DNA of 64,000 nucleotides from positions 62,001-126,000 of the IMG/VR virus record IMGVR_UViG_3300031787_007614, one strand, 5' to 3'. How positions within the stretch are numbered: the stretch's first letter is position 1; the number at the start of each line of letters is the position of its first letter. The notes under the pieces were generated by a model that had not been told where the DNA came from, did no database searches, and saw only the letters and a list, made by a program, of their open reading frames with translations. Position numbers and translations under genes: made by a program. Of the stretch, positions 43,486 to 62,545 are shown piece by piece.

Positions 43486-43712
43486 TTGCGTAGGAGTTCC
43501 ATGGTGTACTCAACATCTCGCATGTGAGCAACAGGCTTGAGCCAGCCGTTGTTGATGCATTCTGCAATGACTTGTTTATATTGTGCAGGACAATGATTAC
43601 TAACTTCAAATCCAGCCCTAGGCACTACTCGAATGCCATCGGGCGAGAATGTGAAATCTGAATCATTTTGACGCAGTGTTTTGTGGGGGCGGCTTGCAGA
43701 AATCTTAATCAT
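43482..43712 (-). CDS. hypothetical protein (probably leaderless mRNA)
   Basis: ATG 6 nt after the -10 box. Confidence 0.65.
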   Translation of the reverse strand: MIKISASRPHKTLRQNDSDFTFSPDGIRVVPRAGFEVSNHCPAQYKQVIAECINNGWLKPVAHMRDVEYTMELLRK

Positions 43713-43718
43713 GCATGC

Positions 43719-43747
43719 AGTATAGCATATCCTGATTTATTGGTCAA
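43719..43747 (-). promoter_or_regulatory. repeat-family early promoter
   Basis: TTGACC-aataaatcaggatatgc-TATACT. Confidence 0.7.
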
Positions 43748-44062
43748 TTACTTAAAAAGTATTAAGGCCATCAAAACCGCTTGCACAATGAATCCTGCAC
43801 CCACTGTGATGATGTTGAGCATGTCTTTGAGCACCACTGCCCGTAAGAACAGCAGGACCAGGCCGGCCCACATAAACAGCACAATGTCCAAACTGGGTGT
43901 GCGATCACTAAGTCCGGTCATCAGCGCCAAAAGTGTGGGAATGGTTGCGGCATGAATCACAATGGCCGCTAGCCAACCTAGTGTTTCTGCGGAGATTTTT
44001 GGCAAGTGATCTTTCAGCCAAAGTTGCAGGATTTCGGCTGTGTGTTGCAAGTCAAATTTCAT
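43748..44062 (-). CDS. 3-TM membrane protein
   Basis: three hydrophobic helices; ETLGW...IP motif. Confidence 0.7.
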   Translation of the reverse strand: MKFDLQHTAEILQLWLKDHLPKISAETLGWLAAIVIHAATIPTLLALMTGLSDRTPSLDIVLFMWAGLVLLFLRAVVLKDMLNIITVGAGFIVQAVLMALILFK

Positions 44063-47863: not shown

Positions 47864-48220
47864 TCAGGCTTTGGCAGCCTCAACCAATTGCTCGGCAGTA
47901 ACAGACTTGGTGGCTTTGGCTTTGACACCTTTAGCAGCCACTTTGACTTCGCCTTTCTTGGCGACTTTGGCACGTTCGGCCAGCTTGTTGGCTACCACGT
48001 AGCCGGCATCACCTTCGGTGATACCCAGGGTCTGCAAGTGTTGCAGAGCTTCTATCTTGGTCATTGCACGGGGCAACTCAACCAAGTTGATCTCAGTGCA
48101 TCCAGCCTTGTTTAGGATCTTGATGCGGGCTACCAGGTCGTTTGCAAAACGAGCCTTAACGGTGCCATCGGCGTTGATTGCGGTACCAGCCACGGTAAAA
48201 GTTTTTTCAGTTGCGGACAT
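47864..48220 (-). CDS. hypothetical protein with Lys/Ala-rich tail
   Basis: FTVAG..KARFAND motif; start MSATEK. Confidence 0.7.
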   Translation of the reverse strand: MSATEKTFTVAGTAINADGTVKARFANDLVARIKILNKAGCTEINLVELPRAMTKIEALQHLQTLGITEGDAGYVVANKLAERAKVAKKGEVKVAAKGVKAKATKSVTAEQLVEAAKA

Positions 48221-48288: not shown

Positions 48289-48319
48289 ATTATAGCAAAA
48301 GAGCAGATTCTGGTCAACC
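48289..48319 (-). promoter_or_regulatory. repeat-family early promoter
   Basis: GGTTGACC-N17-TATAAT. Confidence 0.7.
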
Positions 48320-48353
48320 ACTTTTGCAATAATTTTGATTTGATTTGCCCAAA

Positions 48354-48482
48354 TCACTGGGCCAGTTCCTTGCTTTGGGTTTGGATGGTTTGCACACCTT
48401 TGTCAAACATTCGAGCAATGCCCGAAAAGCCGACAGCACTGACCACCAAGCCTAAAATGAATCCAATTATGAGTTTGCTCAT
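48354..48482 (-). CDS. 42-aa membrane protein (not in ORF track)
   Basis: MSKLIIGFILGLVVSAVGFSGIARMFDKGVQTIQTQSKELAQ*; AAGGA RBS. Confidence 0.65.
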   Translation of the reverse strand: MSKLIIGFILGLVVSAVGFSGIARMFDKGVQTIQTQSKELAQ

Positions 48483-48491
48483 GATGTTTCC

Positions 48492-49283
48492 TTATACAAT
48501 TTTAACACGGTTCAGTTGAGTTTTACCATCGCGGTAGCCCTTGACAGTACCAGTAATGGTATGACGATCACCGGCCTTGAGTGCGACCTTGTAACTAAAG
48601 AACACCGGCTGATCAGCGTCATTCACAGCATTGACCCAGTAGATGTTGAAGTTCTGGCTGTAACTGGCACTCACCACTTCTACATCCATGCCTACCTTGT
48701 CACCCACGGAGCCAACTGTGCCACCAGTTGCTTTCTTCAAGCGGGCTTGCTGTTCTTGACGAGCCATACTGCGCAGATGGCTTTGGGGCAAGCAGGCAAT
48801 CACTGCCAGTTCATATCGATGTTGTTGCGGAAAGAAGCGATCTGTTACTGCCAGCACCTTCTGAGTGGATTGATCAAAGTCATTCAGCTGACCCTTGAGC
48901 GCACGGAAGGTAAGATCATTGCGCAGGAAATTCTGGCACTCCGCACCTTGTGCAATATCTTCTGGCAACAGGCATTCAGGGTGATGCAGGAATTGCAACA
49001 TGACATCACGGTTACGTGGCGTGGTACTCAGCACTTCGCCTTGCTCACCCATGATGTTGCGACCCTCTTTCAGGTACTCACCATTGATGCGTTGAGCGGC
49101 ACAGGCAGCGGCCCACACATTTTCTACAGCATAGCCAGGATGCCCGCCACCGGGTGTGACTTGCACAGAACGGCGTGCGCCACGACGTGGGCGAAGCTCA
49201 TCAGGGGTGTCATCATCAGCATGACCTAGACGTTGCACTTCTCGAGTGCTCCAGCCAGTGACGTCAATAAAACCTGCCATCAT
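48492..49283 (-). CDS. hypothetical protein with possible C-terminal OB-fold
   Basis: start MMAGF after AAGGAG; VGSVGDK...ITGTVKG...TQLNRVK. Confidence 0.65.
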   Translation of the reverse strand: MMAGFIDVTGWSTREVQRLGHADDDTPDELRPRRGARRSVQVTPGGGHPGYAVENVWAAACAAQRINGEYLKEGRNIMGEQGEVLSTTPRNRDVMLQFLHHPECLLPEDIAQGAECQNFLRNDLTFRALKGQLNDFDQSTQKVLAVTDRFFPQQHRYELAVIACLPQSHLRSMARQEQQARLKKATGGTVGSVGDKVGMDVEVVSASYSQNFNIYWVNAVNDADQPVFFSYKVALKAGDRHTITGTVKGYRDGKTQLNRVKIV

Positions 49284-49293
49284 GTTCTGCTCC

Positions 49294-49539
49294 TTAGCAA
49301 TAAAAAGGTGTGCGGAAACCCAGGGCGGAGTACACACATTCGCGCACAGCAGTGTCGGTGGCTTCGCCAAATTCTGCCTGCTCACTCAATGCACACAAGG
49401 CACGATAAGTCTGGGGCCAGGTGAGTTTGTTTTCACGAGCCGACACAACCACGGCATGAACTGCGGCGTTGCCAAGTTCGGTGAACATAGCATAGTCTTT
49501 GATGCCGCCTGTCAAGTTGTATTCAATTTCAATTTCCAT
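49294..49539 (-). CDS. hypothetical early protein
   Basis: start MEIEIE after the repeat promoter/RBS; EATDTAVRE motif. Confidence 0.7.
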   Translation of the reverse strand: MEIEIEYNLTGGIKDYAMFTELGNAAVHAVVVSARENKLTWPQTYRALCALSEQAEFGEATDTAVRECVYSALGFRTPFYC

Positions 49540-49540
49540 T

Positions 49541-49600
49541 TTGAACTCCTTTTTGCTTAACATGTCCATATTATAGCATTTTGGCAATTATTGGTCAACC
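49541..49600 (-). repeat. early promoter/RBS repeat element
   Basis: GGTTGACCAATAATTGCCAAAATGCTATAAT...AAAAAGGAG. Confidence 0.8.
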
Positions 49601-50085
49601 GTTTCTGCCTGCAGAGCCTCGCTCAACAGAGTTAGGCGCTTGCTAAGGGGGTGGGTGTTTTCGTATGTAGTACCAACATACCACACGCCATCTTTCATGA
49701 TGTAGTAGAACTCAGCACCACACCCATCAGCCTGCTCAAGGAACTCTTCAAAGGTGTCGGCTACTTTCCACTCACAGCCAGTCTCGCCGCGATCGCGACC
49801 GTAAAAGGTGCACCAGCCTTCGCTCTTGACCAGTTCCATCAAGGCCAATTTGGCTTCACGCTCAGGGTCATCTTCTTTGATCTCAAACTGGGAGAACGGA
49901 TGTGCTTGACCTATCACTGGGCCCAGGCTTGACATGTCACCCAGAGACACCAAGTGGTTGGCGCGAGCACTATCATAGTGATTTTGTAGGATCTGACCAT
50001 TGTGCTCTAGATAGCCGTCCCAGTGACAGTAAATTGATTTGACTTTGTCACCGTGCATAACACCAATTCTTGAACGTGTACCCAT
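49588..50085 (-). CDS. hypothetical early protein
   Basis: MGTRSRIG..SIYCHWDGY, FYGRDRGE motifs. Confidence 0.75.
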   Translation of the reverse strand: MGTRSRIGVMHGDKVKSIYCHWDGYLEHNGQILQNHYDSARANHLVSLGDMSSLGPVIGQAHPFSQFEIKEDDPEREAKLALMELVKSEGWCTFYGRDRGETGCEWKVADTFEEFLEQADGCGAEFYYIMKDGVWYVGTTYENTHPLSKRLTLLSEALQAETVDQ

Positions 50086-50091
50086 TTTGGA

Positions 50092-50148
50092 CTCCTTTGT
50101 GTTAACTAGTCTCTATTATAGCAAATTGGGATTTTTTGGTCAACCAAA
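50092..50148 (-). repeat. early promoter/RBS repeat (57 bp, 1 mismatch to 50421-50477)
   Basis: direct sequence comparison. Confidence 0.9.
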
Positions 50149-50415
50149 TTCATACATGTGCTGGGCCATGCTGGGATCCAATTGAACCAGGGCAGTTGCG
50201 GCCGCATTAAGCTCGCGATAGCGTCGATTGACTTCTGCACGAGGCAGTTCACCGTCACAGCTGAGATTCTCAGGGCTAAGAGCGCAGTCAATCATTTTGG
50301 CCACTCGCAGGCGGCCTGCCTCAGTTTGAATTTCGTACAAGGGTTCTGTACGCTGACCTCGGAACAAGGCCTGGTATTTGTTCTGACGATCAATGTAGGC
50401 TTGCAGTGCTTTCAT
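50140..50415 (-). CDS. hypothetical early protein
   Basis: LSPENLSCDGEL motif; bracketed by the repeats. Confidence 0.75.
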   Translation of the reverse strand: MKALQAYIDRQNKYQALFRGQRTEPLYEIQTEAGRLRVAKMIDCALSPENLSCDGELPRAEVNRRYRELNAAATALVQLDPSMAQHMYEFG

Positions 50416-50420
50416 CTTGG

Positions 50421-50477
50421 CTCCTTTGTGTTAACTAGTCTCTATTATAGCAAATTGGGATTTATTGGTCAACCAAA
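50421..50477 (-). repeat. early promoter/RBS repeat
   Basis: TTTGGTTGACCAATAAATCCCAATTTGCTATAATAGAGACTAGTTAACACAAAGGAG. Confidence 0.9.
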
Positions 50478-50654
50478 ATAGTTGTCAACGGCACCTTCAA
50501 TGCCTTCCTCAAAGGTGTCCGAATAGTAGCCTGGGATGTCTTGCTCAAAGAAGGCTTTTAGTTCTTTCTTGGAGGGAGTCTTGCCTGTGAGTTCTTTGGC
50601 ATACTCTTTGACAGCTTCGATAGCAGACTTAGGTACAGTGATAGTGATTTCCAT
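50469..50654 (-). CDS. hypothetical early protein
   Basis: start MEITIT after AAGGAG; stop lies inside the next repeat. Confidence 0.7.
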   Translation of the reverse strand: MEITITVPKSAIEAVKEYAKELTGKTPSKKELKAFFEQDIPGYYSDTFEEGIEGAVDNYFG

Positions 50655-50659
50655 TTGCG

Positions 50660-50715
50660 GCTCCTTTTGCGTTAATATGTCCATAGTATAGCAGATCGGG
50701 AATTATTGGTCAACC
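50660..50715 (-). repeat. early promoter/RBS repeat
   Basis: GGTTGACCAATAATTCCCGATCTGCTATACT...AAAAGGAG. Confidence 0.8.
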
Positions 50716-50716
50716 C

Positions 50717-50747
50717 AAAAAAAAGCCCTACAATCTGTAGGGCTTTT
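50717..50747 (-). terminator. intrinsic terminator
   Basis: AAAAGCCCTACA-gat-TGTAGGGCTTTTTTTT. Confidence 0.8.
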
Positions 50748-50761
50748 GTAGTACTTGAGTA

Positions 50762-50971
50762 TTACTTTTTGAACTCGCGTTGCACATAGTACTTGACCAA
50801 GGCTCGCTGGCACATGGTGATCAAGTCCCCATGGTCCTCGGGCACAATAAAACGATATGGGCATCGTCCCCAAGACTTGTGCGTGACAAATTGATTGTAC
50901 CAACGTCGATGTTCTCGGTTGGCAGGATCAAACACAGTGTACGGTCGAGAGTTAAATTGTAAAATGCTCAT
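50762..50971 (-). CDS. hypothetical protein
   Basis: FDPANREHR...WG.CP.RF motif. Confidence 0.7.
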   Translation of the reverse strand: MSILQFNSRPYTVFDPANREHRRWYNQFVTHKSWGRCPYRFIVPEDHGDLITMCQRALVKYYVQREFKK

Positions 50972-50978
50972 GTTGGTA

Positions 50979-51287
50979 CTATCTAATTTGCGTTACTTTG
51001 AGATGTCGTTCTTGCACAATGTCTTTAACAAAATCTAGCAGTTGCTCGGCACTCCATCCGTTGTCTAACCATTCGGTTTGCCACTCATCAAGTCTCCAAA
51101 GCATATCTCTATGAATAGTTTTAATGACGTTTTCTAAACGCTTAACATGTGCAGTAGGTCCTTCAAACAGATATTTGAATTCTGCTTCACCACCCCACGC
51201 ACCTGTGTAGTCTTTGGCACGGCGCTCATGATTGGATGTAATGCCAAAGCCCAATCTATAAGGTCCTGGTAAAATATAAAAGTACAT
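50979..51287 (-). CDS. possible GIY-YIG / T5orf172-like small protein
   Basis: YFYIL...GFGIT..HERR...Y...LE..IK pattern; family call tentative. Confidence 0.55.
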   Translation of the reverse strand: MYFYILPGPYRLGFGITSNHERRAKDYTGAWGGEAEFKYLFEGPTAHVKRLENVIKTIHRDMLWRLDEWQTEWLDNGWSAEQLLDFVKDIVQERHLKVTQIR

Positions 51288-51290
51288 AAT

Positions 51291-52418
51291 TTACTCGTAC
51301 AATGCTTTGATGTCGTCGTCGATAAAATCCATGATCTTTTCAAACCTGTCCAACATGTGTTGTGGCAATTGTTGTGTGCCCCCCATGCGTTGATACATGT
51401 GCAACAACACTACCGCAATGGCGTCATCTTGCCAAGGAAACTTTTCAATATTGTATACTGCCTTGCCCCAACGCTTGTGAGCGGCATGAACTGCTTCGTG
51501 GAATTCTGCCAAACCAGCAAAACACCCTTGCAGTAGACCTGCTAACTCACCTAAGAAATTGTCGGTAATTTTAATATTAGCCGCATCAAACCCAGTTTTA
51601 ATGTCGTCAAACATAAACCACAAAGAACCATTGATAGGATCGTAGTGGAAATATTCATTGTGAAACTTACAAGCCAATTCTAGTGTAGCATCGGGCAAAC
51701 TAAATGCCTTCATGTGGGTGAAAGCGCCAGGAGTAGTACCGGCATGTGGGCTATCCTCGTCCACTGCATAACAATTGTACTTTTCACAAATGGTTTGTTT
51801 ACGCTCTGCATCTACGTCATCTTCATCTTCACTGCCATCGATTCGCACACTCATAACTTTGGTGCGGTGCTCATACCAGGGACTAATTTTCTTTTTGCCT
51901 TTGCCGTTGATCAATGCAAAGGCTTTGCGAGCAAACGCCTTGTTGTCTGTTTCGATGTATAACACCGGAACTTCAACGTTGCGCCAATCTGTTTCACCTT
52001 CAAATACGCCGGCGGCTACCATAGCGGCTACAATTGTGGCAGTATGTTGACCATCTACTGCATGATATTCATCTAGTCCCGGCGCTTTAATACAATACAC
52101 AACTTGGAGAAGTCTAGGATCAAATATACCAATGGTAGAAATCTTGCGACAATGCTTGGGATCCAATGCACGTTGGATGTCTTCATCAATCAACAATAAA
52201 CCAAGTTTAACCATTTTAATCATAGGACGCAGACTTGGGCTAAGTTTAATTCCCGAAGTCTGATATGATTCCATCAGCTTGACCCACTCTTTGTACGACT
52301 GGAGTTCAGTAATTCTGGTCTCAAGGTCTACCACAGTGGCAATGGTATTTTTTAAAGGATTGAGATTTTTCAGTTTATTCGGCTTGCGCACAACTTCTTC
52401 GTAGGCTGGGATCATCAA
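51291..52418 (-). CDS. ParB-like / DGQHR-type domain protein
   Basis: IDEDIQRAL, AVDGQHT, AFALING. Confidence 0.65.
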   Translation of the reverse strand: MMIPAYEEVVRKPNKLKNLNPLKNTIATVVDLETRITELQSYKEWVKLMESYQTSGIKLSPSLRPMIKMVKLGLLLIDEDIQRALDPKHCRKISTIGIFDPRLLQVVYCIKAPGLDEYHAVDGQHTATIVAAMVAAGVFEGETDWRNVEVPVLYIETDNKAFARKAFALINGKGKKKISPWYEHRTKVMSVRIDGSEDEDDVDAERKQTICEKYNCYAVDEDSPHAGTTPGAFTHMKAFSLPDATLELACKFHNEYFHYDPINGSLWFMFDDIKTGFDAANIKITDNFLGELAGLLQGCFAGLAEFHEAVHAAHKRWGKAVYNIEKFPWQDDAIAVVLLHMYQRMGGTQQLPQHMLDRFEKIMDFIDDDIKALYE

Positions 52419-52420
52419 AG

Positions 52421-52473
52421 GCTCCTTGGTTAAGATGTATGTAGTATAGCAAATTGGGAAATATTGGTCAACC
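52421..52473 (-). repeat. early promoter/RBS repeat
   Basis: GGTTGACCAATATTTCCCAATTTGCTATACT...AAGGAG. Confidence 0.8.
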
Positions 52474-52799
52474 TAGACAATGGCCGCTTTTTGCGTTTGG
52501 CGATCACTGTGGAACACCGTGCCAATCTCTCGAATGGTGTCAGCGGCATGCTGTGGCGATGCCTCAAACATTTCGCGAATGTCCTCGGCTGTGATGCCTT
52601 TCACAGTTTCAAACACATAGATTTCATAGTGCCGCTGAGAGTTGTACCGAGCCCGCAGGCGCCAGTGCAAGATGTTGGGAAGTTTAGGCGGTTCTGTACC
52701 TTTGAGCAAGGCAAAGGTGGTTTCAGCAGGATCGGGCAGTTGTTCCACGGCCTCAAGGCCATTGCAGTCCCACATCACAGCAAAGCGATTGTGTTTCAC
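52473..52799 (-). CDS. hypothetical protein
   Basis: MWDCNGLE, LRARYNSQRHYEIY motifs. Confidence 0.7.
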   Translation of the reverse strand: MKHNRFAVMWDCNGLEAVEQLPDPAETTFALLKGTEPPKLPNILHWRLRARYNSQRHYEIYVFETVKGITAEDIREMFEASPQHAADTIREIGTVFHSDRQTQKAAIV

Positions 52800-53020
52800 A
52801 GTCGGAACCTTGCCAACACGGCTTGCGCTTCGGTTATGTCTTCCACTGCTTGGTCGTCTACCAGCGCCAGCTCTTGCATGGCCAATTCTGTACGAGCCGC
52901 TTGAAGCAGTTCCAATGCATATTTGTAATCATCTGCATCAGCGTAGAAATGCCATTCTTCTAGCGTTTCTTTGCTGGCGTTCATCAAGAAGTTAAGATTG
53001 TCGCGGTCCCAGTCGTTCAT
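52796..53020 (-). CDS. hypothetical protein
   Basis: 74 aa; AGGAG RBS. Confidence 0.7.
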   Translation of the reverse strand: MNDWDRDNLNFLMNASKETLEEWHFYADADDYKYALELLQAARTELAMQELALVDDQAVEDITEAQAVLARFRL

Positions 53021-53045
53021 TCAAATCTCCTAAAAACATGCTTTA

Positions 53046-53074
53046 AGTATAGCATGAATGAGATTATTAGTCAA
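53046..53074 (-). promoter_or_regulatory. sigma70-type early promoter
   Basis: TTGACT-N17-TATACT. Confidence 0.7.
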
Positions 53075-53093
53075 GTACTACTGAAGTATTAGT

Positions 53094-53339
53094 TTATGCC
53101 CAGTGTAGCACAAACGCAAAGAAGTCGCGGTCAGAGTCAAAGTAAAAAATGTATCTGCCAGGGCGGTGATCCGAACTGCCATCAATCAGTTGCCAACGCC
53201 ACTCATCTATCAGTTCAGTTTTGCACCAAGCCAGCACACGATCCAGTTCGCCGTAGGGTTTGAGAATTTCACGAGCATAGCGGAAGCTGTCCCCTGGGCG
53301 TATTTCTTGTGAAGAATGATGTCTTAGCAGGTTCATCAA
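53094..53339 (-). CDS. small protein of the F-x-L-x-W C-terminal motif family
   Basis: ends FYFDSDRDFFAFVLHWA. Confidence 0.7.
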   Translation of the reverse strand: MMNLLRHHSSQEIRPGDSFRYAREILKPYGELDRVLAWCKTELIDEWRWQLIDGSSDHRPGRYIFYFDSDRDFFAFVLHWA

Positions 53340-54154
53340 TAGTATGTATTGGCAAATTCCTGTGGTTGCAAATTTTGATCCAGCACATGATTGTACATGA
53401 TGTTTTTAACTGTGTTCAATCGATCAATTTTTGTTCTACTGCCCAGTACCACAATCACATACTGTTGTCCACGTTGATTGGCAACCAAGCCCACACACCA
53501 CCCAGCAGCCGAAGTCAGTCCAGTTTTGCTTACCACAATGTTGTCGAATGTGAACAAGATGTTGCCCGAAGTGTGGTCTAACCGAATGGTTCGGATTTGT
53601 TTTTTGTGCCGTGTTTCCAAGGCCACTTGTTTTTTAGTACTGGTCTCACGGATAAACCAATAGTTGGAAGCCAAAGTTATCATTGCAGCCACATCATGCA
53701 CTGTGGAGGTGTTGGCAGCACCCAGTCCCGAAGCATCTTCAAACTGTGTGTGTTTGAGATCCCAAGCCTGAGCTTGACTGTTCATTCGTGCAATAAAAGC
53801 AGTTCTGCCGCCAGGATAATCTTCTGCTAGAGTTTCGGCAGCCGCGTTGTCAGATTTTACCAACATGGCTTCCAGCAGTTGTTCTCTAGTGTATTGTTGC
53901 CTGGGCAAATAACTGCCCACACGCTTGGTCAGTGTGAGTCGTCTGCTGAGATCCTTGTCATAGTCCAAGGCAACCATGGCAGTCATGATCTTGGTGATTG
54001 ACGCAATGGCTCGCACACGATCCGCATTGCGAGAGAGTTCAATATGATTGGTACTGGTGTTTAGTAGTAGTACTGATTCTGAATTTGGTGTGGGCCGGAC
54101 AGGCTTGGCCACAGCCACATTTGCCATCATCGCAAGTATCAAAATCCATCGCAT
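53336..54154 (-). CDS. peptidase S11 D-Ala-D-Ala carboxy/endopeptidase (PBP7-like)
   Basis: signal peptide; SxxK (ASITK), SDN, KTG. Confidence 0.9.
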   Translation of the reverse strand: MRWILILAMMANVAVAKPVRPTPNSESVLLLNTSTNHIELSRNADRVRAIASITKIMTAMVALDYDKDLSRRLTLTKRVGSYLPRQQYTREQLLEAMLVKSDNAAAETLAEDYPGGRTAFIARMNSQAQAWDLKHTQFEDASGLGAANTSTVHDVAAMITLASNYWFIRETSTKKQVALETRHKKQIRTIRLDHTSGNILFTFDNIVVSKTGLTSAAGWCVGLVANQRGQQYVIVVLGSRTKIDRLNTVKNIMYNHVLDQNLQPQEFANTYY

Positions 54155-57997: not shown

Positions 57998-58449
57998 ACG
58001 CCAGCCTTTCTGTTTGCCAAATATTGTTCCCACTGCACCCATTGATTACGAACCAAGAAGCCCCAGTCTCTTTGCTTGATACCGGGCATGAACAAGGTCC
58101 AACATTCTACCGCCGGATCCAATTCAACTCTGTGATAGGTATTGGCACCTGCACATCTAAAACTGCCCGCACCACACCAACGAGCCACTTCGTTGATCTT
58201 CATACCATTCTCATCAAACTGTGGGCGCCATTCCCAGTATCCACCTTTGAGGATCAAGGTGGCATAGGGCCATGGATGATCATGCACATCGTCTGGATCT
58301 GACTTTAGAAACTTGTGTACAAACACATTGAATGGGAATCGTTTTCGATCCTTGAGAAACACATAGTAGCGTTCCAAATACGGCTCACCATTCACACGGT
58401 CCATGATTATGCGATATCGACCCAAACGCTGGAAGAATTTTTTAAGCAT
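57994..58449 (-). CDS. cupin-fold protein
   Basis: YLERY, HKF..SD.D..HDHPW, GGYWE, HRV, WTLF, WGF. Confidence 0.75.
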   Translation of the reverse strand: MLKKFFQRLGRYRIIMDRVNGEPYLERYYVFLKDRKRFPFNVFVHKFLKSDPDDVHDHPWPYATLILKGGYWEWRPQFDENGMKINEVARWCGAGSFRCAGANTYHRVELDPAVECWTLFMPGIKQRDWGFLVRNQWVQWEQYLANRKAGV

Positions 58450-58455
58450 ACAGCT

Positions 58456-58484
58456 ATTATACAGGAAAAGTCAATTTCAGTCAA
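58456..58484 (-). promoter_or_regulatory. sigma70-type promoter (leaderless transcript)
   Basis: TTGACT-N17-TATAAT; ATG 6 nt downstream. Confidence 0.7.
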
Positions 58485-61010: not shown

Positions 61011-61240
61011 ACCAATTCTCCTGTTGCATCGTTGACCTTGCCGTAGTAGACAGCCTCGAATCCGTTGCCGTTCTCAAGCCAACCATTTATGTTCCAGTTA
61101 TCACGGTGCTGGTTGTAGAATCCCGCCCACATGAGTGCATCTTCACGGGTGTTAAACTCTTCCTCACGCTTGACCTTGTACAGGTTGGGTTCACCAAGTT
61201 CCACGGGGTGGACATAAACGATGTGTACGTATTTTGTCAT
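61007..61240 (-). CDS. hypothetical protein
   Basis: 77 aa, ATGA-coupled. Confidence 0.6.
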   Translation of the reverse strand: MTKYVHIVYVHPVELGEPNLYKVKREEEFNTREDALMWAGFYNQHRDNWNINGWLENGNGFEAVYYGKVNDATGELV

Positions 61241-61650: not shown

Positions 61651-61929
61651 TCACATGCTCCAGTAAGTTTCGCTGGCAGGGTTGCAACACCATGGAGTGT
61701 CTGCGTCAATTTCTACAGGCTTACCTGACATCAAATTGCGAACAGTGATCTTGGGTGCAACATAAGTGTCACGAGCAACAATGCTCAAATCATTCACTGA
61801 CCAACCTGCTTTATTGCAAAGACGAGTGCGAGTGGCATGGGCGGCACCAAAAGTTTTGTATGCACGGTTTTTAATAGGACCGTCTGTAACAATAAGACCT
61901 GTACCTTTTGCGACAATTACGTATGACAT
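61651..61929 (-). CDS. hypothetical early protein
   Basis: VRNLMSG...DTPWCCNPASETYWSM. Confidence 0.75.
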   Translation of the reverse strand: MSYVIVAKGTGLIVTDGPIKNRAYKTFGAAHATRTRLCNKAGWSVNDLSIVARDTYVAPKITVRNLMSGKPVEIDADTPWCCNPASETYWSM

Positions 61930-61932
61930 TTT

Positions 61933-61990
61933 GGGCTCCTTTTTGTTAAACTATGCTATATTATAGCAAATCGGGCATTATTGGTCAACC
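61933..61990 (-). repeat. early promoter/RBS repeat
   Basis: GGTTGACCAATAATGCCCGATTTGCTATAAT...AAAAAGGAG. Confidence 0.8.
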
Positions 61991-62218
61991 GAATGCTTTC
62001 ACAAGCCCCGTAAGTCCAATTGCTACACTTACAAGATTCACAAACATCTGTGGTTTATTTGCAACACGGATGCACCATATCAGAAACAGTATGGTTCCTA
62101 TAAAAAATGTAAGGATATTGTAGGGATAGGCCGCGGGCCCGATAGCGTTGAGGCTGTGCCCTGCTACAATAAACACGGCACCTGCCCACTGCAAAATTTC
62201 GTTAGTATCTAATTTCAT
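61985..62218 (-). CDS. small 3-TM membrane protein (probably leaderless)
   Basis: three hydrophobic segments; stop lies inside the repeat. Confidence 0.7.
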   Translation of the reverse strand: MKLDTNEILQWAGAVFIVAGHSLNAIGPAAYPYNILTFFIGTILFLIWCIRVANKPQMFVNLVSVAIGLTGLVKAFG

Positions 62219-62224
62219 ACCTTA

Positions 62225-62255
62225 ATTATAGCAGTTTGGGCATTATTGGTCAACC
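62225..62255 (-). repeat. early promoter repeat (no RBS)
   Basis: GGTTGACCAATAATGCCCAAACTGCTATAAT. Confidence 0.8.
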
Positions 62256-62277
62256 AAAAAGTAGTACTTTTGTAGTA

Positions 62278-62484
62278 CTACTTTTTGAGGATTTCGTAAA
62301 ATTGCTGGTTGAGCGCATCCATTTCCGCCTGACTCACGTAGAAGTCAGTACGGGGGTCATAGTAGGCACCCTCTTTGTTGTCATAATACAACACTCTGCC
62401 TGAGAAGTTGAACGGGCCTTCTAGCCCGGCACGAGCACTGTATTTTTCGCGCATGTTGTCAACTTCAAAGACTTTGTAACCCAT
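62278..62484 (-). CDS. hypothetical early protein
   Basis: GLEGPF...GRVLYYD.KEG.YYDP.TDFY. Confidence 0.75.
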   Translation of the reverse strand: MGYKVFEVDNMREKYSARAGLEGPFNFSGRVLYYDNKEGAYYDPRTDFYVSQAEMDALNQQFYEILKK

Positions 62485-62489
62485 TGCCA

Positions 62490-62545
62490 GCTCCTTTTGT
62501 GTCTGTATGCCCAAATTATAGCAAATTGGGAATTATTGGTCAACC
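62490..62545 (-). repeat. early promoter/RBS repeat
   Basis: GGTTGACCAATAATTCCCAATTTGCTATAAT...AAAAGGAG. Confidence 0.8.

What the first reader, a model, noticed from the sequence alone, without database searches (positions are those of the whole stretch)
48289..53074. Array of single-gene cassettes bounded by a conserved promoter+RBS repeat
Seen: the minus-strand element GGTTGACCAATAATTCCCAATTTGCTATAAT-(N~20)-AAAGGAG-N5-7-ATG recurs at ~48289 (no AGGAG), 49541, 50092, 50421, 50660 and 52421, with a weaker copy at 53046 and further copies at 43719 and 61933-62545. The 17-nt spacer is conserved, which sigma70 recognition does not require. The copies at 50092-50148 and 50421-50477 are 57 bp with one mismatch and exactly bracket one gene. 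Stop codons fall inside or against the repeat: three unrelated genes end in F-G-stop because the repeat supplies GGT TGA (50140, 50469, 61985). Inference: the repeats serve both as strong early promoters and as recombination joints for acquiring, deleting and shuffling early (host-takeover / anti-defence) genes, as proposed for PeSL-type repeats in T4-like phages.
Basis: partly seen in the sequence, partly recalled or inferred. Interest (0 to 1): 0.7.

Follow-up and report, generated by a model that had tools for sequence, protein, structure and literature searches.

The report
Promoter repeats that shuffle phage genes
A 364-kb freshwater T4-type phage carries about 30 copies of a roughly 60-base promoter-plus-ribosome-site repeat in front of small genes of unknown function, and its relatives gain, lose and move those genes at the repeats: a known kind of phage gene-shuffling device (PeSL-like) in a phage group where it had not been described.

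Summary
The 31-mer GGTTGACCAATAATTCCCAATTTGCTATAAT occurs 8 times in the window at 3 mismatches or fewer (0 expected). At 9 or fewer it occurs 29 times in the 364-kb genome, all on the minus strand. Each copy lies before a small ORF. Copies end at an AAAGGAG ribosome site about 61 nt from the repeat start, or at an ATG at +37.

The genome is a jumbo phage with a T4-type (Gp23) capsid. Its nearest cultured relatives are in the PA5oct / Vibrio 2.275.O group.

- In about 200 related contigs, junctions carrying the repeat have lost synteny in 95% of comparisons, against 63% at other junctions.
- Cassettes F (241 bp) and H (545 bp) of the focal array are missing from relatives. A single repeat sits at each junction and aligns to both flanking copies.
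- An extra cassette is inserted between F and G in other relatives.
- One cassette (w61929) sits in three different repeat clusters in different genomes.
- Repeats flanking a gene in one genome are more alike than same-position copies in other genomes (p<=0.0005), which indicates exchange between copies.

Promoter activity, early timing and anti-defence roles remain untested. The stem-loop that defines PeSLs accompanies only about 7 of 29 copies. I therefore call this a PeSL-like variant, not a PeSL.

The parts
62485..62545 (-). Repeat copy with 0 mismatches to the 31-mer consensus, followed by leader, AAAGGAG and an ATG at 62484
62278..62484 (-). Cassette gene, 68 aa. Its homologues lie in at least 8 different neighbour contexts in relatives
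62219..62255 (-). Repeat copy of the leaderless type: the ATG at 62218 lies 7 nt after the -10. An AT-rich hairpin lies just upstream
61985..62218 (-). Cassette gene, 77 aa, with a sub-threshold DUF6552 match. It ends AFG* using GGT TGA of the next repeat
61930..61990 (-). Repeat copy (2 mismatches) with SD leader
61651..61929 (-). Cassette gene, 92 aa. It is found with its repeat in three different repeat clusters in relatives, and homology starts within 6 nt of the repeat's 5' end
53021..53076 (-). Weak, diverged copy (TTGACT-17-TATACT) before the 74-aa gene at 52796-53020
52416..52473 (-). Repeat copy (2 mismatches). It is the left breakpoint of the C-D module replacement in L136
50979..52415 (-). 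Two-gene module: C (374 aa, unknown) and D (102 aa, weak T5orf172/GIY-YIG-like match). It is replaced as a block in L136
50762..50971 (-). Gene E (69 aa), followed by an intrinsic terminator at 50721-50747
50655..50715 (-). Repeat copy (3 mismatches) directly after the terminator. This is the composite terminator-promoter form
50469..50654 (-). Cassette F (61 aa, ends YFG*). The 241-bp unit 50475-50715 is absent from L135, L136 and L155
50416..50477 (-). Repeat copy, 56 of 57 identical to the copy at 50092-50148
50140..50415 (-). Cassette G (91 aa, ends EFG*). Across 80 metagenome loci its homologues have 47 distinct neighbour pairs
50086..50148 (-). Repeat copy, the other member of the 57-bp near-identical pair
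49588..50085 (-). Cassette H (165 aa, phrog_1987, function unknown). The 545-bp unit 49601-50145 is absent from L118, L162, L169 and L173
49540..49600 (-). Repeat copy (3 mismatches). H's stop (TAA) lies in its spacer
48354..49539 (-). Genes I (81 aa), J (263 aa) and K (42 aa, hydrophobic), read from the 49600 repeat with no repeat between them
48289..48319 (-). Degenerate copy (8 mismatches) with a 68-nt leader to the ATG at 48220. This form is conserved in L124, L113 and L136
43713..43749 (-). Degenerate copy (8 mismatches) with the same short spacing to its start codon as the leaderless class (ATG at 43712, +37). It fell outside the <=7-mismatch set counted

Best explanation
The element is a dispersed family of a complete expression signal about 60 bp long. 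It consists of GG, a -35 (TTGACC), a 17-bp spacer ending in an extended -10 (TGC TATAAT), a predicted start at the conserved CATA 7 nt downstream, a short A-rich leader, AAAGGAG and an ATG at +61. A minority form has its ATG at +37.

Each copy most likely acts as a promoter for the host sigma70-type RNA polymerase and drives one or a few small genes. Early timing is inferred by analogy.

The copies are co-oriented, nearly identical for 30-57 bp, and fill the whole gap between adjacent genes. They therefore also serve as substrates for the phage's homologous recombination system. Exchange between two copies in one genome deletes or duplicates the cassette between them and homogenises the copies. 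Exchange between co-infecting relatives swaps, inserts or moves cassettes.

The repeat carries stops in all three frames on its 5' side and a ribosome site on its 3' side, so any such join leaves both neighbouring genes intact and expressed.

Shown here: the family, its anatomy, cassette indels and translocations with junctions in the repeat, and concerted evolution of the copies. Inferred: promoter activity, timing, the recombination mechanism, and what the cassette genes do.
For: Family and statistics:
- 8 copies against 0 expected in the window; 29 in the genome, all on the minus strand.
- Sigma70-type sites number 77 on the gene-rich minus strand and 15 on the plus strand.
- Across 226 distinct copies the 5' boundary is sharp: information content jumps from 0.1-0.3 to 1.3-2.0 bits at the GG. 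The conserved CATA and AAAAAGGAG leader follow.

Cassette indels at the repeats:
- L118 lacks H. Its two alignment blocks (to w50770-50090 and to w49600-49352) overlap on exactly the one 57-bp repeat.
- L136 lacks F. Its blocks (to w50971-50649 and to w50477-48458) overlap by 70 nt, which is the one repeat.
- L163, L184, L213 and L214 carry an extra cassette of about 330 bp, with its own promoter, between F and G.

Translocation and shuffling:
- The w61929 cassette lies in the 124k cluster in this genome, in the 155k cluster in L025 and L097, and in the 112k cluster in L013. Homology begins at g123991-123996, at the repeat's 5' end.
- Cassette genes recur with a promoter upstream in many neighbour contexts, and the neighbours are mostly cassettes from other clusters.
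- Among 80 loci chosen only for holding a G homologue there are 47 distinct neighbour pairs. A sigma70-type promoter lies upstream of G in 75 of 80.

Enrichment: repeat junctions are broken in 301 of 318 comparisons, other junctions in 811 of 1278 (odds ratio 10). At the junction level, Mann-Whitney p=0.004.

Mosaic identity: in L178 and L193 adjacent cassettes E, F, G and H are 97-98, 81, 73-76 and 95% identical in protein.

Concerted evolution: flanking copies within a locus are 0.758 identical, against 0.691 for same-position copies in other loci (permutation p<=0.0005). L012 carries three tandem near-identical 65-bp copies with a lineage-specific spacer.

Crossover position: identity gradients along the repeat fit crossovers inside it. 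The 3' leader follows the downstream gene and the -35 side follows the upstream gene.

Machinery and relatives:
- A RecA/UvsX-like gene is present and no tyrosine recombinase was found.
- The related phage PA5oct depends on host RNA polymerase and uses TTGAC/TATAATA promoters (PMC7318152).
- The same model was proposed, and supported experimentally with mini-circles, for PeSLs in T4-type phages (PMC2839356, PMC4122927).
Against: - No transcription data are available, so promoter activity and timing rest on the consensus match and on analogy.
- The repeats occupy nearly all the intergenic space. Selection for intact genes would concentrate surviving breakpoints there even if recombination began elsewhere.
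- 63% of non-repeat junctions in these regions are also broken, and some breakpoints lie at plain gene boundaries. The whole region is plastic.
- The junction counts are pseudo-replicated, because the relatives are related to one another.
- The closest strains (L009-L011, L099, about 100% identical) show no cassette differences. No very recent event was caught.
- Logan contigs break at the repeats, so they give no read-level evidence for deletions or circles.
- The same spacer recurs in relatives only 72-90% identical in DNA. That could reflect a functional constraint and not copying.
Confidence: 0.75

Rival explanations
1. Passive promoters. The repeats are only a strongly constrained class of promoter with its 5'UTR. 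Gene turnover comes from illegitimate or micro-homology recombination anywhere in the region, and selection keeps only events that fall between genes. Breakpoints then appear to coincide with the repeats because the repeats are the only intergenic DNA.
For: - Intergenic gaps consist almost entirely of the repeat, and upstream stops often lie inside it.
- Non-repeat junctions are also broken in 63% of comparisons.
- In L136 the C-D replacement ends at a repeat-free gene boundary.
- Promoter-less junctions such as GGTTAAGGAG..ATG and GGTTGACATG occur after G in some lineages.
Against: - In the F and H indels a single repeat aligns with both flanking copies, with no extra or missing bases. This is the signature of homologous exchange, not end-joining.
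- Copies within a genome are homogenised in both spacer and leader (L012; the 56/57 pair).
- About half of the genome's sigma70-type sites have unrelated spacers, so the spacer is not needed for a promoter as such.
Confidence: 0.15
2. Regulatory constraint. The conserved spacer and start-site region are a binding site for a phage or host factor, or a class-specific RNA polymerase contact, that defines a co-regulated (for example immediate-early) gene set. Similarity between copies would then reflect convergent or purifying selection and not copying. This could hold alongside the recombination role.
For: - The same spacer consensus is kept in at least 119 viral contigs that are only 72-90% identical to this genome in aligned DNA.
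- Spacer positions carry 0.8-1.7 bits in 226 copies, although those copies were selected by similarity to the motif.
- Family-type copies precede small ORFs, whereas generic sigma70-type sites precede tRNAs and other genes.
Against: - Lineage-specific variants replace the spacer wholesale while the local copies stay identical to each other (L012; L174, L177, L206 and L211). This fits copying better than a fixed binding site.
- No inverted-repeat or covarying structure was found in the core.
- No regulator candidate was identified.
Confidence: 0.25
3. A site-specific or self-mobile element. The repeats would be recombination sites for a dedicated recombinase (integron-like), or miniature mobile elements or homing-endonuclease targets that insert by themselves.
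For: - The arrangement looks like an array of single-gene cassettes.
- A small T5orf172/GIY-YIG-like ORF lies in the array at 50979-51287 (below the Pfam cut-off).
Against: - No tyrosine recombinase is present in the genome.
- The repeats are direct, co-oriented with the genes and always placed at a start codon. They have no terminal inverted repeats or target duplications and no attC-like folding.
- Integron cassettes typically lack their own promoter (from general knowledge), whereas each cassette here carries one.
Confidence: 0.04

Closest known systems
PeSLs (promoter-early stem-loops) of T4-type phages: RB49/phi1, T4/PST, KVP40/nt-1 (Arbiol et al. 2010, PMC2839356; Comeau et al. 2014, PMC4122927)
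   Same: - A repeated sigma70-like promoter, with the upstream gene's stop at its 5' side and SD plus ATG at its 3' side.
- Copies are clustered in plastic regions before ORFans.
- Indels and replacements between relatives have junctions in the repeats.
- The host genome has a T4-type (Gp23) capsid gene.
- The proposed mechanism is the same: homologous exchange between copies.
   Different: - The defining stem-loop is not part of the repeat. The core folds no better than shuffled sequence (mean z +0.15) and shows no covariation. Only about 7 of 29 copies have a terminator-like hairpin just upstream.
- There is no conserved AT-rich block upstream of the -35.
- The conserved unit includes the whole 5'UTR.
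- A second class of copies has its ATG at the predicted transcription start.
- The phage is a 364-kb uncultured freshwater jumbo phage whose capsid is nearest the PA5oct / Vibrio 2.275.O group.
- Mini-circles are untested.
T4 early promoters (extended consensus beyond the two hexamers; review PMC2988021 listed but not read, so this comparison is from general knowledge)
   Same: Many strong sigma70-type promoters with a TGn extended -10 and conservation outside the hexamers, read by unmodified host polymerase early in infection.
   Different: From general knowledge, T4's -35 is GTTTAC-like with A-rich upstream elements. Here the -35 is GGTTGACC, with no upstream element and a much more uniform spacer and leader.
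Morons of lambdoid phages (promoter, gene and terminator units inserted between genes; from general knowledge)
   Same: Autonomous single-gene expression units that come and go between otherwise syntenic genes.
   Different: Morons do not share a common repeated promoter that could itself serve as the recombination site. Here the shared repeat is the junction.
Integron gene cassettes
   Same: Arrays of single small genes that are gained, lost and reordered at a repeated site.
   Different: There is no integrase. The site is a direct repeat holding a promoter upstream of each gene, not an attC hairpin downstream of a promoter-less gene. Exchange is most likely by general homologous recombination.
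Promoters of Pseudomonas phage PA5oct (Lood et al. 2020, PMC7318152)
   Same: It is a capsid relative (65% identical), depends on host RNA polymerase, and has 32 putative promoters with TTGAC and TATAATA motifs near transcription starts.
   Different: In the passages I read, that paper makes no claim of a conserved spacer or leader repeat or of cassette shuffling. I did not examine its promoter table.

Membership tests
PeSL (promoter-early stem-loop) of T4-type phages | Repeated sigma70-like promoter (-35, about 17 nt, -10) | tested here: met
   TTGACC-17-TATAAT with TGn. There are 29 copies, all co-oriented, against 0 expected. Promoter activity itself was not tested.
PeSL (promoter-early stem-loop) of T4-type phages | A stable stem-loop within or beside the promoter, acting as terminator or attenuator | tested here: not met
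   The core from 0 to +60 folds no better than shuffles (mean z +0.15). There is no covariation between the spacer and the start region in 226 copies (z 1.2-1.6). A significant hairpin just upstream occurs in only about 7 of 29 copies, for example 50721-50747.
PeSL (promoter-early stem-loop) of T4-type phages | [quoted passage not shown] | tested here: not met
   Information content is 0.0-0.3 bits at positions -45 to -1, with only a weak T run. The upstream stops lie inside the repeat instead, at GGT TGA or CAA TAA.
PeSL (promoter-early stem-loop) of T4-type phages | Shine-Dalgarno and start codon of the downstream gene at the 3' end | tested here: met
   279 of 337 distinct copies have an SD, with the ATG mostly at +60 to +62. 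32 instead have the ATG at +36 to +38.
PeSL (promoter-early stem-loop) of T4-type phages | Concentrated in plastic regions, immediately upstream of ORFans | tested here: met
   Copies are clustered at 8 places in the genome. Downstream proteins have no informative Pfam or PHROG family. The regions show high synteny loss.
PeSL (promoter-early stem-loop) of T4-type phages | Indels and replacements between related phages have their junctions at the repeats | tested here: met
   The F and H cassette indels each leave a single repeat at the junction. There are also insertions, translocations and mosaic identity, and enrichment with odds ratio 10.
PeSL (promoter-early stem-loop) of T4-type phages | Formation of mini-circles by exchange between neighbouring copies | not testable with these tools
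   Only Logan contigs were available, and they break at the repeats.
PeSL (promoter-early stem-loop) of T4-type phages | Host genome belongs to the T4 superfamily | tested here: met
   The Gp23 major capsid family PF07068 matches at E 7e-98, and a RecA/UvsX-like gene is present. However, no TATAAATA late promoter lies before the capsid gene, and the nearest cultured capsids are PA5oct-group jumbo phages.
Integron cassette array | Tyrosine-recombinase integrase and attC sites downstream of promoter-less cassettes | tested here: not met
   PF00589 is absent from the complete genome. The repeats hold promoters, lie upstream of the genes and have no hairpin.

The most novel reading that the evidence does not exclude
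The repeat may be more than a promoter that happens to recombine. It could be a selected, clade-wide cassette-exchange platform of uncultured freshwater jumbo phages: a standard 60-bp connector that ends any upstream gene in all three frames and supplies transcription and translation signals downstream, in either an SD or a leaderless version. Recombination at it might be actively promoted, for example by a phage nuclease or by transcription-coupled breaks. The whole clade would then share one pool of freely combinable accessory genes.
Probability: 0.15. Interest if true: 0.75.

Novelty: new variant of a known kind. Interest (0 to 1): 0.55.

Why it matters
It extends promoter-repeat-mediated modular shuffling, so far documented for a few cultured T4-type phage pairs, to a large and abundant clade of uncultured freshwater jumbo phages.
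- At least 119 viral contigs hold the exact motif, and more than 480 metagenome stretches encode one cassette gene.
- The metagenome comparisons sample many more related genomes than the cultured phage pairs did. They yielded clean single-cassette indels, the same cassette in several clusters, and measurable homogenisation of the repeats.

It shows that the stem-loop is dispensable for the shuffling pattern.

The repeat also gives a practical handle. It marks the accessory-gene pool of these phages, which are candidate host-takeover or counter-defence genes. It could also serve as a PCR or search anchor for recovering cassettes from metagenomes.

Tried and rejected
- Cultured near-relatives: megablast of the region against 50,697 phage records gave no match.
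- Read-level evidence for the 329-bp deletion or a circle: only Logan contigs were available. They end at the repeats, and their 'joints' have sides of 30-36 nt or come from other copies. I judged them uninformative and did not use the second read-laying run.
- A stem-loop spanning the -10: this was suggested by CCCAATTT..AATTTGGG in the copy at 62545. It was rejected because there is no covariation across 226 copies and no folding excess.
- A T4-type late promoter (TATAAATA) as a timing contrast: it is not used before the capsid gene, and there are only 9 copies in the genome.
- AGTACTAC as a further motif: 15 copies on the minus strand, mostly inside genes. It is only part of a few terminator flanks.
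- Function of the cassette proteins: Pfam, PHROG and one Atlas search gave only unknown viral families.
- My first gapped pattern had the wrong spacing and found nothing.
- The stop-position census mis-assigns a few copies where two frames are open, so I treat its fractions as approximate.

Full report
**What the window is.** The window is bases 62,001-126,000 of a 364,404-bp virus record with direct terminal repeats, rated complete.
- It encodes a T4-type major capsid protein (Pfam Gp23, E 7e-98).
- The nearest cultured capsids, at 65% identity, belong to Vibrio phage 2.275.O and the Pseudomonas PA5oct group of jumbo phages.
- It has a RecA/UvsX-like gene. No sigma70-type factor and no tyrosine recombinase were found.
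- The public runs that hold this DNA are mostly labelled freshwater or lake metagenomes; several are labelled fungus metagenomes.
- No record in the phage collection is similar at the DNA level.

**Checking the observation.** All of it holds.
- The 31-mer GGTTGACCAATAATTCCCAATTTGCTATAAT has 8 matches in the window at 3 mismatches or fewer, all on the minus strand, against 0.00 expected.
- The genome has 11 matches at 3 or fewer and 29 at 9 or fewer, all on the minus strand. The plus strand has none at 9 or fewer.
- The copies lie in eight clusters: about 9.6-10.3k, 105.7-115k, 124k, 128.6-130.2k, 154.6-155.1k, 190.8-191.6k, 235k and 345-353k.
- A scan using the two hexamers alone finds 77 sigma70-type sites on the minus strand and 15 on the plus strand. 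About half of the minus-strand sites have unrelated spacers.
- The 57-bp copies at 50092-50148 and 50421-50477 differ at one position, and identity collapses immediately outside them.
- The genes ending at 50140, 50469 and 61985 end in FG* through GGT TGA of the repeat.
- The TGC before TATAAT is the extended -10, so that part of the spacer is expected.

**Anatomy.** I aligned 226 distinct copies from this genome and its relatives.
- The 5' edge is sharp. Information content rises from 0.1-0.3 bits to 1.3-2.0 bits at the first G, and there is no conserved AT-rich upstream block.
- After the -10 come a conserved CATA (its first A is 7 nt after the hexamer, the expected start site), an A-rich leader and AAAAAGGAG.
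- Start codons fall in two sharp classes. Most lie at +54 to +63, mainly +61. A second class lies at +36 to +38, with none between +41 and +50.
- By type, 279 of 337 distinct copies have an SD, and 32 have an ATG at the predicted start site with no SD after it. Six of the 32 are in this genome, including the copy at 62255; the degenerate copy at 43749 has the same +37 spacing but fell outside that count.
- The repeat has a stop in each frame. In roughly half of the copies the upstream gene ends inside it.
- The core folds no better than shuffled sequence (mean z +0.15). Only about 7 of 29 copies have a significant terminator-like hairpin directly upstream, for example 50721-50747.
- A hairpin across the -10, suggested by one copy, is not supported by covariation.

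**Relatives, first set.** Where these contigs align to this genome they are mostly 72-90% identical, so they form a diverse clade.

Four relatives were found through gene C. L009 is near-identical. L012 is 80% identical in that protein, and L013 and L014 are 66-67%. They show heavy reshuffling.
- L012 has four cassettes after D, three of them preceded by a near-identical 65-bp repeat whose spacer differs from the one here. Two of those genes are homologues of genes that lie in other repeat clusters of this genome.
- L013 has the w61929 cassette between D and G.

The w61929 cassette also sits in the 155k cluster in L025 and L097. In each comparison, homology to this genome starts at g123991-123996, within 6 nt of the repeat's 5' end.

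In six relatives (L028, L061, L094, L102, L104, L127), cassettes that are spread over four or five clusters here lie side by side in one array.

**A junction test.** For every pair of neighbouring genes in this genome I asked whether the neighbourhood is kept in each relative. Repeat junctions were broken in 301 of 318 comparisons (95%). Other junctions in the same contigs were broken in 811 of 1278 (63%). The odds ratio is 10, and taking each junction once gives Mann-Whitney p=0.004. The background is high because the regions are plastic as a whole, and the comparisons are not independent.

**Relatives, second set.** I fetched 80 metagenome loci chosen only because they encode a homologue of cassette G, at 68-89% identity.
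- They show at least 25 upstream and at least 24 downstream neighbour families, and 47 distinct neighbour pairs.
- A sigma70-type promoter lies directly upstream of G in 75 of 80 loci and directly downstream in 52 of 80.
- G ends in EFG* in 69 of 80.

**Clean events in the focal array.**
- Cassette F (241 bp, 50475-50715) is absent from L135, L136 and L155. In L136 the alignment blocks to w50971-50649 and w50477-48458 overlap by 70 nt, which is the single repeat left at the junction.
- Cassette H (545 bp, 49601-50145) is absent from L118, L162, L169 and L173. In L118 the two blocks overlap on the 57-bp repeat.
- L163, L184, L213 and L214 have an extra cassette of about 330 bp, with its own promoter, between F and G.
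- In L178 and L193 the order is the same as here, but protein identity for E, F, G and H runs 97-98, 81, 73-76 and 95%. This mosaic fits allele replacement cassette by cassette.
- A counter-example: L136 replaces C-D as a block. The left end lies in the repeat at 52473 and the right end lies at a plain gene boundary.

**Do the repeats themselves exchange?**
- In the G-anchored loci, the two repeats flanking G in one genome are 0.758 identical. Copies at the same position (upstream of G) in different genomes are 0.691 identical (permutation p<=0.0005). The difference holds separately for spacer and leader.
- Several lineages have their own spacer or leader variant shared by neighbouring copies (L012; L174, L177, L206 and L211).
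- In this genome the copies before G and before H share one leader, whereas the copy before G in L118 has another.
- Among pairs of copies that share the downstream gene but not the upstream one, the SD-proximal leader stays similar (0.73, against a background of 0.47). Pairs that share only the upstream gene keep more of the -35 side.
- These patterns fit crossovers inside the repeat and gene conversion between copies. A lineage-specific constraint could contribute.

**Mechanism.** The best-supported account is a sigma70-type promoter and 5'UTR family that doubles as the substrate for homologous recombination by the phage's own machinery. It produces deletion, duplication, insertion, replacement and movement of single-gene cassettes. 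Both neighbours stay intact because the repeat supplies stops on one side and translation signals on the other.

Promoter activity and early timing are inferences. They rest on the consensus match and on the host-polymerase dependence of the relative PA5oct (PMC7318152). The anti-defence or host-takeover role of the genes is not supported by any result here, since the proteins are of unknown function.

**Comparison with the known.** The closest described system is the PeSL of T4-type phages (PMC2839356, PMC4122927).
- Shared: the layout (stop, promoter, SD, ATG), the location before ORFans in plastic regions, and junctions of indels at the repeats.
- Different: the stem-loop and the AT-rich upstream block that define PeSLs are not part of this repeat. 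The conserved unit extends through the 5'UTR, there is a class with the ATG at the start site, and the phage group is different.

It therefore works like a PeSL but fails two defining features, and I class it as a new variant of a known kind. It is not an integron-like system. A search of the held literature found no description of such repeats in this jumbo-phage group.

**Limits.**
- Read-level evidence could not be obtained, because the available runs are kept as contigs that break at the repeats.
- The nearest strains (about 100% identical) show no cassette differences, so no very recent event was seen.
- Gene calls in my scripts are simple ORF calls. Counts that depend on them are approximate.

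Noticed in passing
window 62219-62255 (ATG 62218); genome copies at g235210, g191576, g155149, g129866, g10255: In a sub-class of the repeat the start codon sits at +36 to +38, so its A lies 7 nt after the -10, where the transcript should start, and no SD follows. This predicts leaderless mRNAs. It covers 32 of 337 distinct copies across the clade. Start positions are sharply bimodal, at +37 or about +61. The degenerate copy at window 43713-43749 (ATG 43712) has the same +37 spacing but was not in that count.
   Followed up: partly
window 53336-54154 (-): A 272-aa D-alanyl-D-alanine carboxypeptidase (Peptidase_S11, E 4e-37) is encoded just upstream of the array. This is an unusual cell-wall enzyme for a phage.
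   Followed up: no
window 50979-51287 (-): A 102-aa ORF inside the array has a weak, sub-threshold match to the T5orf172 (GIY-YIG-like) domain (E 0.0014). It could be a remnant or a small nuclease near the recombining repeats.
   Followed up: no
L009 against window 58405-58470, 47987-48054 and 61164-61173: An otherwise near-identical strain (99.75-100% in the aligned blocks) has deletions of about 65, 66 and 10 bp. The first removes the -10 of a non-family promoter and the start of the next ORF. None lies at a family repeat. They may be real variants or assembly errors.
   Followed up: partly
L148, L164, L165, L179, L182, L189, L194-L198 and L205 (after the G homologue); also L156, L171, L163: Promoter-less junctions retain pieces of the repeat. 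Examples are GGT TAA GGAG..ATG, GGTTGAC ATG and GGTTGACCAAAAAGGA..ATG. They look as if the segment between the -35 and the SD had been deleted or was never present.
   Followed up: no
whole genome G000: Sigma70-type sites are strongly strand-biased, 77 on the minus strand against 15 on the plus strand. Several precede tRNA genes, for example g151105, g359043 and g4127. No T4-type late promoter (TATAAATA) precedes the Gp23-type capsid gene at g260210-261406.
   Followed up: partly
window 50721-50760; g130260-130303; g348070-348117: A longer composite repeat of about 120 bp (AGTACTACAAAAGCCCTAC..GTAGGGC, a T-run, then the promoter repeat) recurs at three places at 82-90% identity. It is a terminator-promoter form of the element.
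   Followed up: partly
window 51291-52415 (-): The 374-aa protein C carries a DGQH-like motif but matches no Pfam family. It is conserved (66-80%) in L012-L014 but replaced by unrelated sequence in L136.
   Followed up: no
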